DNA from: Octopus sinensis
Taxonomy: Eukaryota
Direction of reading: 5' to 3'
Assembly: GCF_006345805.1 (NCBI RefSeq)
Contig: NC_043016.1
Span: 17,298,001 to 17,362,000, forward strand
DNA length: 64,000 nucleotides
A program made the position numbers and the translations under genes. The notes under the pieces are model-generated. The model had not been told where the DNA came from and did no database searches. It worked only from the letters and a program-made list of their open reading frames with translations. Within the stretch, counting starts at the first letter, position 1, and each line of letters begins with the position of its first letter. Below are positions 35,297 through 38,200 of the stretch, piece by piece.

Positions 35297-38200
35297 CTCT
35301 CTCTCTCTCTCTCTCTCTCCCTTTCACTTCCTCTCCATTCCTCACCCTCTTGTACTATCATATATCTCTCTTCACCCCTACACACTCAATAAAACTGTAA
35401 AAAGTCAAAATTCCTGCAAAAGTTCAATTTGAAGACTCCACCAGAAAGGACGAAAGCGCTAATATATGATATATGATATAAGTTATATGATTTATAAAAA
35501 CATGTAACATACTAATAAATATCTTTAAATATAAAACCATCCAGATTTCTGAGTACCTCATTTCTTCTGATATATAATACCTGTACATCATCTCCAAACC
35601 TTAATATATATATATATATATATATATAATTAATTAATAAGGGTGAGAGAATTAGATACTAATTTAATAGTATATTTATTCAACACCAAGTGGCCTAGTG
35701 CTACGAGAAACCTGGATTATTATAATATTTTATAACATATTACAATACTTTTACAAAACAAATATAAGAGAGTGGTCAATATATTGCTCACTCTAGCACC
35801 AGTTAATCCAAAAGGTTTCAACCACGAAGATACATGTTTCCCATGAAAGCCAGTACGACTGTTAGCTCACACGGACAGGGCAAGTAAAAAATAACAAAAA
35901 TACAGATTATTTTGGGACAATTGTTTCGCTATTAATGAATTAAATGTAATATTACTTACAAAAAAATCCATTTGTAGCTCGTCAGCCAAGACTATCTGGA
36001 TGAAATCCACTCAATCACACGCCAGATTTTACCATAACGATAAATACGCGTGTGGTTCAATTGATTACATCCGACGTTATAATTCAAATGCCCCAACCAA
36101 CAGCGCGCCAAACTTTCACGGAAAACAGATACAGCATTTAGAAATAAATGCAGCATAATTATAATTAATTAATAAGGGTGAGAGAATTAGATACTAATTT
36201 AATAGTATATTTATTCAACACCAAGTGGCCTAGTGCTACGAGAAACCTGGATTATTATAATATCTTCGTGGTTGAAACCTTTTGGATTAACTGGTGCTAG
36301 AGTGAGCAATATATTGACCACTCTCTTATATTTGTTTTGTAAAAGTATTGTAATATGTTATAAAAATTATAATAATCCAGGTTCTCGTAGCACTAGGCCA
36401 CTTGGTGTTGAATAAATATACTATTAAATTAGTATCTAATTCTCTCACCCTTATTAATTAATTATAATTATGCTGCATTTATTTCTAAATGCTGTATCTG
36501 TTTTCCGTGAAAGTTTGGCGCGCTGTTGGTTGGGGCATTTGAATTATAACGTCGGATGTAATCAATTGAACCACACGCGTATTTATCGTTATGGTAAAAT
36601 CTGGCGTGTGATTGAGTGGATTTCATCCAGATAGTCTTGGCTGACGAGCTACAAATGGATTTTTTTGTAAGTAATATTACATTTAATTCATTAATAGCGA
36701 AACAATTGTCCCAAAATAATCTGTATTTTTGTTATTTTTTACTTGCCCTGTCCGTGTGAGCTAACAGTCGTACTGGCTTTCATGGGAAACATGTATCTTC
36801 GTGGTTGAAACCTTTTGGATTAACTGGTGCTAGAGTGAGCAATATATTGACCACTCTCTTATATTGTTTTATATATATATATAATATATATATATATAGA
36901 TAAGAAAGTTGATATATATATATGTACATACATACACACACACAAAGACTCACACATGTTTACACATACTCACACACACATGTAGAAGAAACAAAATATA
37001 CAATGTATGTGGCATGTTGTAATTCCATAAGTTTTCACTTAAAATTGCATAAATATGATAACAGAATTATTTGATACTTAGTAAAATATATAATCTCTCT
37101 AAGAATCCTATTTTTTATATCAGAAATGTGTTCTGAGTATTTTTTGTATGAACTAAAATGCTTCTTATATTAACTTGATTATTATTGTAATATTTAATCT
37201 TAAGTTTGATACTTGTAAAAAATAGTTATAATTGCAATGAATTTTTTTTTTTTTTGTTCTGGATGAATTTGGAACAAATTGAAATAACTTATTTCTCAGC
37301 ATGGTATGTTTTCAGGAATATATACTTGCAAGAATGTATGATATTTTTTAAGTATTTTATCATCATTTAATTTCCAGCATTTTTAAATGTTTTGCTTATA
37401 ATTTAAGTAATGTATTTAAATGTCATGTTGTCAAAGTTTGTACTTATAATTTTACATTTACATTGCCAATTCTGAATTGACAAATTTAACTCTATTTCTA
37501 AATTTCCAAATCAGATTTGTTTTATGATTTAAGTTCTTAGTAGCTTCTATATTTTCCAAATATTTCCAACAATTCACATCATGAATGTATCTTTCATTTT
37601 TTTTTTTTCCCTCTCTCAATTTTTCTTCTGCTGAAAGGAGACCCCTTGCAAACCTTCATGATTCTCTTCCTGCCTTGAATAGTAAATCACTTTTCAGATA
37701 TCATTCACTAATAAATGTTATTGTGCAGTAAATAATTCAAAATTTGGTCTACAACATCCTTAAACAAGTCTTTCTACTAAATTGGAGAAAACCTCAACAT
37801 CAATGAATCATTTCTAATGTAAACCTTCCAGCAAATGGATAAACTAAAATCTAATTATTTCTTTAATCTTCAGATGAAAACTGAAAGAAATTCCCGGTAG
37901 AAAATATTAATTAGCATAAGTAGTAATTAGAATTACTTTACCTTGATTAACATCCTTAAGAAGGTGCCCAGAGAAATATTTAACACCAAATTTTCTCTTC
38001 TGTTAACTTTTCTTTTATCTCTGTTTTGTCTGTACATTCTAGCAATTTACTCTGGAGAAATACCAGGTAAGTGGTTCAGTCAAGAATATACATTGGGCAT
38101 TCCTCCATCAATTCACATCTTTCTATGAGTCTCTTCTTTACTTTTTAATCCTTCTCAAGATAAACAACCAATTTTCTTCAGCATATACAATTTTACATTT

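What the first reader, a model, noticed from the sequence alone, without database searches (positions are those of the whole stretch)
38043..38066. Second 24-nt phase-1 microexon (IYSGEIP) with another Ser-Gly and a sulfation-type tyrosine
Seen: a ~50-nt pyrimidine tract, AG, 24 nt, GTAAGT. It has the same length and phase as the first microexon. All four include/skip combinations stay in frame with no stop (junction residues I, T, P, L or V). Established: mammalian nidogen-1 is tyrosine-sulfated in this linker. Inference: two independent 8-residue cassettes, each carrying Ser-Gly, are unlikely to be chance and suggest combinatorial modification of the linker. More such cassettes may have been missed by eye.
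Basis: partly seen in the sequence, partly recalled or inferred. Interest (0 to 1): 0.75.

Follow-up and report, generated by a model that had tools for sequence, protein, structure and literature searches.

The report
Candidate second microexon in nidogen linker
A 24-base stretch deep in a 49-kb intron of an octopus-type nidogen gene carries all the signals of a tiny extra exon and resembles a neighbouring tiny exon that a related species confirms, but nothing yet shows that it is used.

Summary
At 38043-38066 there is ag|CAATTTACTCTGGAGAAATACCAG|gtaagt, 24 nt and phase 1-1. It sits in the 48.8-kb intron between the last NIDO exon (4982-5073) and the EGF exon (53883-54017) of a nidogen-like gene. 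Splice signals are strong: a perfect CAG|GTAAGT donor, an 82% pyrimidine tract, a TTAAC branch point at -36 and no upstream AG for 58 nt. Signal strength alone is not significant; 0.3-1 such in-frame cassettes are expected per intron of this size.

The candidate has the same length and phase as that exon, and Ser-Gly at the same residues. The null expectation for this combination is 0.005 or less per intron.

Against it: A. hians proteins carry only one 8-residue insert, and its intron has no counterpart. The two window microexons share no DNA similarity beyond TCN-GGA. No transcript data could be reached.

Verdict: probably a real, lineage-restricted cassette (about 0.5); otherwise an unused pseudo-exon. 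The glycosaminoglycan, sulfotyrosine and combinatorial readings remain untested motif inference.

The parts
4982..5073 (+). Exon A: last NIDO-domain exon (…[30 protein letters not shown]), ends in phase 1, donor AAA|gtaagt
   Evidence: Collinear with A. hians exon …GQYIFHLSDQNGKEIREPERDN.
26245..26268 (+). ME1: 24-nt phase 1-1 microexon TCGAAGGATCAGGAACCGACACTC (x-EGSGTDT-x).
   Evidence: 14/24 nt identical to L001 34209-34232, including the run GGATCAGGA (null maximum 12). Local alignment beats 298 of 300 random windows.
37990..38042 (+). 3' splice region of the candidate: pyrimidine tract (82% Y), TTAAC branch-point candidate at 38003-38007 (branch A at 38006, 36 nt from the AG), acceptor tAG at 38040-38042
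   Evidence: Its 50-nt pyrimidine fraction exceeds all 23 verified octopod nidogen acceptors.
38043..38066 (+). ME2, the finding: candidate 24-nt phase 1-1 cassette CAATTTACTCTGGAGAAATACCAG (x-IYSGEIP-x)
   Evidence: Unique sequence within the window.
38067..38072 (+). Donor GTAAGT. With the exon's last three bases it forms the perfect U1-complementary 9-mer CAGGTAAGT.
   Evidence: only two such 9-mers in the window on either strand; the other is the verified exon C donor at 55918.
53883..54017 (+). Exon B: EGF-like module preceding G2 ([45 protein letters not shown]), phase 1-1
55684..55920 (+). Exon C: first G2F exon, 77% identical to A. hians
57105..57302 (+). Exon D: G2F
57694..57912 (+). 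Exon E: G2F

Best explanation
ME2 (38043-38066) is most likely a genuine 24-nt cassette exon of a cephalopod nidogen gene. It would be restricted to the window's lineage, that is, absent from or lost in Argonauta.

Proposed mechanism (inferred):
- The exon is too short to carry much enhancer information, so recognition would rest on exon definition.
- Exon definition would be driven by an unusually long pyrimidine tract, a good branch point and a perfect U1 site.
- The purine-rich core GGAGAAA resembles a splicing enhancer.

Effect of inclusion: eight residues are inserted in the short G1-G2 linker, immediately before the EGF module that precedes the G2 barrel. The insert is T-IYSGEIP after exon A or P-IYSGEIP after ME1, followed by V-DEDL. 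This lengthens a linker of about 15-23 residues. It adds one Ser-Gly next to an acidic cluster (a possible xylosylation site) and one tyrosine.

ME2 is the sibling of the conserved microexon ME1 (acidic-Gly-Ser-Gly). The relation could be ancient exon duplication or convergence on the same Ser-Gly register.

Shown: the sequence anatomy, the orthology of ME1, and the statistical rarity of the ME1-like features. Inferred: actual splicing, alternative use and any modification.
For: - Exact canonical anatomy.
- The donor ties the best of 23 verified octopod nidogen donors, and the 50-nt pyrimidine fraction exceeds all 23 acceptors.
- In a PWM-free test, ME2 is the only hit on the sense strand of the intron, with none in about 177 kb of antisense decoy.
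- CAGGTAAGT occurs only at ME2 and at a verified exon in the whole window; 0.15 are expected per intron strand.
- ME1 is validated by the A. hians gene model and genomic locus. That annotation used RNA-seq and Octopus protein homology (PMC12682272).
- Of 92 open 24-nt phase 1-1 AG..GT cassettes, only ME1, ME2 and one cassette without splice signals have Ser-Gly at residues 3-4. The null expectation for such a cassette at PWM >=10 is 0.005 per intron.
- The region is unique, not part of a repeat.
- No nested gene is visible nearby.
Against: - There is no transcript evidence of any kind.
- Both A. hians nidogen proteins carry a single 8-residue insert. The A. hians intron has no ME2-like cassette or conserved island.
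- ME1 and ME2 share only the Ser-Gly codons at DNA level: 6/24 against a null mean of 5.9.
- Splice-signal strength alone is expected by chance 0.3-1 times per intron. Transposon copies in the same intron score higher.
- The 20-nt acceptor PWM score is below the median of real exons (5.7 against 9.1).
Confidence: 0.5

Rival explanations
1. ME2 is a pseudo-exon. A pyrimidine tract plus AG happens to lie 24 nt before a consensus donor in a very long, AT-rich intron. It is never or only negligibly spliced, and the Ser-Gly and 24-nt match with ME1 is coincidence picked out by eye.
For: - 0.3-1 equally strong in-frame cassettes are expected per intron.
- Stronger decoys exist in transposon copies.
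- ME2 is not conserved in A. hians.
- There is no DNA similarity to ME1.
- The A. hians proteins need only one insert.
Against: - The joint event of exactly 24 nt, phase 1-1, an open frame, in-register Ser-Gly and good sites has a null expectation of 0.005 or less.
- ME2 has one of only two perfect U1 9-mers in the window.
- Its pyrimidine tract is longer than that of any verified exon.
- There were no comparable decoys in about 177 kb of antisense sequence.
Confidence: 0.38
2. ME2 is a constitutive exon in this species. The linker would always be exon A-ME1-ME2-exon B, and Argonauta has simply lost it.
For: Very strong splice signals. Constitutive microexons typically have near-consensus sites (general knowledge).
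Against: The nearest available orthologues lack it. This is a sub-case of the best explanation; the tools used here cannot separate the two.
Confidence: 0.12
3. ME2 is an intermediate used only to remove the 27.6-kb ME1-to-exon B intron in steps (a recursive-splicing exon), or it belongs to another, nested transcript.
For: It sits roughly mid-intron, 11.8 kb after ME1 and 15.8 kb before exon B.
Against: - Joining ME1 or exon A to ME2 gives CTC|CAATTT or AAA|CAATTT, which does not rebuild a 5' splice site. Recursive removal needs one (read from the sequence).
- No neighbouring open frames, domains or further exons were seen on either strand.
Confidence: 0.04

Closest known systems
Annotated 24-nt microexon of Argonauta hians nidogen-1-like (GAB1611093.1 / GAB1610272.1; L001 34209-34232, VDGSGFGP) and its window orthologue ME1
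   Same: Same intron, 24 nt, phase 1-1, tAG acceptor, GTAAGT donor, and Ser-Gly at residues 4-5 of the 8 inserted. ME2 also ends in Pro, as the Argonauta exon does.
   Different: ME2 has Ile-Tyr where the conserved exon has acidic-Gly. It shows no significant DNA similarity to either (9/24 to Argonauta, 6/24 to ME1). It has no counterpart in the Argonauta intron.
Vertebrate nidogen-1 (entactin) G1-G2 link region
   Same: Same position in the protein, between the NIDO globule and the EGF that precedes G2. Entactin is a sulfated glycoprotein (PMC2115676). That its sulfate is on tyrosines in the link is from my own knowledge.
   Different: The vertebrate link is much longer and, as far as I know, is not built from microexons. 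There is no sequence similarity to IYSGEIP. The linkers of other invertebrate nidogens retrieved here are diverse and mostly lack Ser-Gly.
Alternative exons that add or create glycosaminoglycan attachment sites (CD44 v3; APP exon-15 skipping giving appican) - from general knowledge
   Same: A small alternatively included segment supplies Ser-Gly next to acidic residues, turning a protein into a part-time proteoglycan.
   Different: Nothing here shows xylosylation. ME1 (EE-I-EGSG) fits the acidic-Gly-Ser-Gly consensus far better than ME2 (IYSGE).
Neuronal microexon programme (SRRM4/eMIC-dependent, 3-27 nt)
   Same: Size class, frame preservation, strong pyrimidine tract, location in a surface or linker region.
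   Different: There is no UGC motif between the tract and the AG (…ttttgtctgtacattctag). The host is a basement-membrane protein, and tissue specificity is unknown.

Membership tests
Nidogen (host gene) | G2F beta-barrel preceded by an EGF module | tested here: met
   Pfam G2F 5.3e-39 and EGF. Best solved structure is mouse nidogen-1 G2, 1gl4, at 1.3e-37.
Nidogen (host gene) | N-terminal NIDO domain upstream of the linker | tested here: inconclusive
   Only the last 30 residues (exon A) lie in the window. They are collinear with the NIDO-containing A. hians orthologue. The upstream NIDO exons are outside the window.
Nidogen (host gene) | C-terminal EGF rod and LDL-receptor YWTD propeller | tested here: inconclusive
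   EGF exons at about 60972-61094, 62623-62745 and 63651-63770 match the A. hians rod. The YWTD part lies beyond the window.
Cassette microexon (27 nt or less, frame-preserving) | Length 27 nt or less, a multiple of three, open in the host frame | tested here: met
   24 nt, phase 1-1, all four isoform combinations open.
Cassette microexon (27 nt or less, frame-preserving) | Canonical, strong 3' and 5' splice signals | tested here: met
   tAG acceptor, 82% pyrimidine tract, TTAAC branch point, CAG|GTAAGT donor.
Cassette microexon (27 nt or less, frame-preserving) | Presence in mature transcripts, with both inclusion and skipping | not testable with these tools
   No protein, ORF or DNA record of the source species could be found.
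Cassette microexon (27 nt or less, frame-preserving) | Conservation of exon and flanks in related species | tested here: not met
   No counterpart in the orthologous A. hians intron by blastn, cassette scan or peptide pattern.
Tandemly duplicated (possibly mutually exclusive) exon pair with ME1 | Same intron, same length, same phase | tested here: met
   Both are 24 nt, phase 1-1, 11.8 kb apart.
Tandemly duplicated (possibly mutually exclusive) exon pair with ME1 | Sequence similarity above chance | tested here: inconclusive
   In-register Ser-Gly is rare in the null (0.35 per intron for any cassette, 0.005 with usable sites). DNA identity is 6/24, equal to the null mean, and the flanks are not similar in register.
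Tandemly duplicated (possibly mutually exclusive) exon pair with ME1 | Mutually exclusive use | not testable with these tools
   Needs transcripts. The reading frame does not enforce exclusivity.
Glycosaminoglycan attachment site | Ser-Gly with nearby acidic residues | tested here: met
   Met at motif level only: IYSGEIPVDEDL has Glu at +2 from the Ser and Asp-Glu-Asp at +6 to +8. It lacks the Gly before Ser and the acidic run that ME1 and Argonauta have.
Glycosaminoglycan attachment site | Actual xylosylation or chain attachment | not testable with these tools
   Needs biochemistry.
Tyrosine O-sulfation site | Acidic residue next to the Tyr, several acidic and few basic residues within +/-5 | tested here: inconclusive
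   Position -1 is Ile. After exon A there are 3 acidic residues and 1 Lys within +/-5; after ME1 there are only 2 acidic (peptides, judged against consensus rules from general knowledge).

The most novel reading that the evidence does not exclude
Both 24-nt exons are real, independently regulated cassettes. ME1 supplies a canonical acidic-Gly-Ser-Gly glycosaminoglycan acceptor. ME2 supplies a second Ser-Gly plus a sulfatable tyrosine. Cephalopod nidogen would then be a splice-controlled part-time proteoglycan with four linker states, a way of tuning basement-membrane cross-linking not described for nidogen in any animal.
Probability: 0.1. Interest if true: 0.6.

Novelty: new member of a known kind. 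Interest (0 to 1): 0.35.

Why it matters
If ME2 is used, the short G1-G2 linker of a cephalopod nidogen comes in several lengths, set by one conserved microexon and one lineage-specific microexon. Each carries Ser-Gly. That would give a concrete, testable case of microexon birth in an extracellular-matrix protein outside the nervous-system programme. It would also hint that nidogen can carry a glycosaminoglycan chain. If ME2 is not used, it is a textbook near-perfect pseudo-exon and a warning for by-eye exon calls in giant introns.

Tried and rejected
- Word-index protein search with the spliced window protein containing ME2: no hit.
- The same search with the A. hians NIDO-to-G2 segment found only an unrelated 37% nidogen and the O. 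bimaculoides N-terminal fragment XP_014775567.1. That fragment stops before the linker.
Exon C alone worked and gave the A. hians proteins.
- Exact-ORF look-ups of the window ORF covering ME2 and of the ORF covering exon C: not on record.
- The second A. hians locus (P0058) is too long to be served.
- The ENA contig L002 (a more distant nidogen, 51% identical) ends 3.7 kb upstream of its exon B and shows no cassette there, so it is uninformative.
- Metagenome scans found nothing, either for a degenerate genomic ME2 pattern or for the ME2-exon B junction.
- Literature searches on nidogen with microexon, nidogen with octopus, and microexons with cephalopod found nothing relevant.
- Exon-duplication test by local and anchored alignment of ME1 and ME2 flanks: no in-register similarity. 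The only notable match is an off-register 11-mer, CTGTTAACTTT.
- Recursive-splicing reading rejected, because no 5' splice site is rebuilt at the junction.
- Nested-gene reading rejected, because there is no coding potential nearby.
- Repeat-derived exon rejected, because the region is unique in the window.
- The splice PWMs are approximate weights written from general knowledge, not trained models. They were calibrated only against 23 verified exons.

Full report
**What is in the window.** The + strand carries part of a nidogen-like gene in an AT-rich, repeat-laden animal genome. Five exons, all in phase 1, flank the finding:
- Exon A, 4982-5073 (…[30 protein letters not shown]).
- Exon B, 53883-54017, an EGF module.
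- Exons C, D and E at 55684-55920, 57105-57302 and 57694-57912.

The spliced product hits Pfam G2F at 5e-39 and the mouse nidogen-1 G2 crystal structure at 1e-37. Further EGF exons follow to the end of the window. The A-to-B intron is 48.8 kb long. It is filled with microsatellites, SINE-like repeats and a reverse-transcriptase fragment.

**The observation.** It is exact: …ctgttaacttttcttttatctctgttttgtctgtacattctag|CAATTTACTCTGGAGAAATACCAG|gtaagtgg.
- The exon is 38043-38066, 24 nt, and reads x-IYSGEIP-x in phase 1.
- The 50 nt upstream are 82% pyrimidine.
- No AG occurs within 58 nt upstream of the acceptor.
- TTAAC lies 36 nt before the AG.
The finding is called ME2.

**Is it more than chance?** I scored every AG…GT pair with approximate splice-site weight matrices and used three controls.
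- *Signals alone.* ME2 scores 18.5 bits and is the best non-repeat cassette on the sense strand. A Markov-3 null gives 0.31 equally good in-frame cassettes of 9-60 nt per intron. Real antisense sequence (198.7 kb) gives about 0.5-1 per intron. Transposon copies at 8.9 and 9.2 kb score higher. Splice signals alone therefore prove nothing.
- *Comparison with real exons.* Among 23 verified exons of this gene and its Argonauta orthologue, ME2's donor ties the best. Its 20-nt acceptor score is below the median but within range. Its 50-nt pyrimidine fraction exceeds all 23.
- *Perfect donor.* The 9-mer CAGGTAAGT occurs only twice in the window on either strand: at ME2 and at the exon C donor. The expectation is 0.15 per intron strand.
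- *Resemblance to ME1.* Of 92 open 24-nt phase 1-1 cassettes, three have Ser-Gly at residues 3-4. These are ME1, ME2 and one cassette without splice signals. The null expectation for such a cassette with usable sites is 0.005 per intron, and 0 of 1000 nulls reached ME1's score.

These last figures rest on features chosen after inspection, so they overstate significance somewhat.

**Comparative evidence.** An exhaustive profile-free search with exon C found GAB1611093.1, 'nidogen-1-like isoform X2, partial' of Argonauta hians (77% identical), and its sister GAB1610272.1. Both read …EIREPERDN-VDGSGFGP-IGEEFGPAFCKSGYKCHH. That is exactly one 8-residue insert between the counterparts of exons A and B.

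In the genomic locus L001 the insert is a 24-nt phase 1-1 microexon at 34209-34232: ttctctag|TTGACGGATCAGGATTTGGACCAA|gtaagt. It sits in a 10.6-kb intron.
- It matches window ME1 at 14/24 nt, including the run GGATCAGGA (anchored null maximum 12).
- The local alignment beats 298 of 300 random windows.
- The A. hians annotation combined ab initio, RNA-seq and Octopus-protein evidence (PMC12682272).

ME1 is therefore a real, conserved microexon whose constrained core is acidic-Gly-Ser-Gly. Elsewhere the two genes are only 46-77% identical per exon.

ME2 fares differently. blastn of ME2 with 200-nt flanks finds only microsatellite matches in L001. The A. hians intron contains no other Ser-Gly cassette and no [YFW]SG[EDQ] or SG..P peptide with splice sites. 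ME2 against the Argonauta exon gives 9/24, and ME2 against ME1 gives 6/24, the null mean; the ME1 and ME2 flanks are also unrelated in register.

ME2 is thus either younger than the Octopus-Argonauta split, lost in the compact Argonauta intron, or not an exon. Closer genomes and any transcripts were out of reach.

**Mechanism.** My best reading, at about 0.5, is a genuine lineage-restricted cassette. It would be recognised through exon definition by an exceptionally long pyrimidine tract and a perfect U1 site, with a purine-rich GGAGAAA core. It would insert IYSGEIP just before the EGF that precedes G2.

The main rival, at about 0.38, is an unused pseudo-exon. Constitutive use is a sub-case that I cannot separate from alternative use. 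A recursive-splicing intermediate is unlikely, because neither CTC|CAATTT nor AAA|CAATTT rebuilds a donor. A nested gene is unlikely, because there is no coding potential nearby.

**Function.**
- *Glycosaminoglycan.* The conserved ME1/Argonauta motif (EE-I-EGSG-T; DN-V-DGSG-FG) fits the classical xylosyltransferase preference for acidic residues followed by Gly-Ser-Gly (general knowledge). ME2's YSGE, followed by DED, fits more loosely.
- *Sulfotyrosine.* The tyrosine has Ile at -1. It has three acidic residues and one Lys within ±5 after exon A, but only two acidic residues after ME1. 'Sulfation-type' is therefore weak.
- *Background.* Entactin/nidogen is a sulfated glycoprotein (PMC2115676). 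Linkers of other invertebrate nidogens retrieved here are diverse, and most lack Ser-Gly.
- No modification can be tested with these tools.

**Novelty and score.** Frame-preserving microexons and splice-controlled glycosaminoglycan sites are known kinds. I found no literature on nidogen microexons in cephalopods, although database isoforms probably exist, since the Argonauta product name cites an 'isoform X2'. ME2 would be a new member of a known kind. Interest is moderate (0.35), because the finding is unverified and its biology is ordinary unless the proteoglycan idea holds.

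Noticed in passing
Acidic-Gly-Ser-Gly and the run GGATCAGGA are conserved while the rest of the exon has diverged.
   Followed up: yes
window 26251-26268: An AG inside ME1 (tcgaAG|GATCAGG) gives a possible tandem acceptor 6 nt downstream. It would produce an 18-nt variant (R-SGTDT) that keeps Ser-Gly but drops Glu-Gly.
   Followed up: no
window 7775-8712: A perfect palindrome: two 467-nt arms, 100% complementary, 4 nt apart. It could be a foldback element or a long-read assembly artefact.
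   Followed up: partly
window 8897-8956 and 9170-9229 (+), with more copies on the - strand: A repeated element carries splice-like signals stronger than ME2's, with open frame …[18 protein letters not shown]. It is a ready-made source of pseudo-exons in this genome.
   Followed up: partly
window 9258-10676 (-): A 473-aa open stretch with reverse transcriptase (RVT_1, 4e-31) and a weak PHD finger hit. It is a retrotransposon fragment antisense to the nidogen intron.
   Followed up: partly
window 12409-13044: About 600 bp of trinucleotide-type simple repeat that reads as poly-Asn, poly-Ile or poly-Leu runs in different frames.
   Followed up: no
L001 62800-72050: At least a dozen near-identical partial copies of the 3' half of exon C (…[34 protein letters not shown]) follow the real exon in the A. 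hians assembly. This is either a tandem duplication or an assembly artefact.
   Followed up: no
L001 55338-58605: Six tandem copies of a 39-nt AG…GTGAGA unit preceded by pyrimidine tracts. These are the only other hits of the PWM-free exon test.
   Followed up: no
window about 26309-26349 and 37986-38027: The intron just downstream of ME1 and the branch-point region of ME2 share the 11-mer CTGTTAACTTT within a 41-column local alignment. It is off register with the exons, and 7 of 300 random windows score as high.
   Followed up: partly
window 38229-38234: A UGCAUG (Rbfox-type) hexamer lies 163 nt downstream of ME2, but inside a TG-rich microsatellite. The intron holds 31 such hexamers, so it is not distinctive.
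   Followed up: partly
L002 (ENA ERZ21867824, contig ctg91222l): A metagenome-labelled assembly contains a nidogen gene of an unidentified animal, 51% identical in exon C. Exons B, C and D are recognisable at about 3690-3836, 5837-6067 and 11891-12091.
   Followed up: partly
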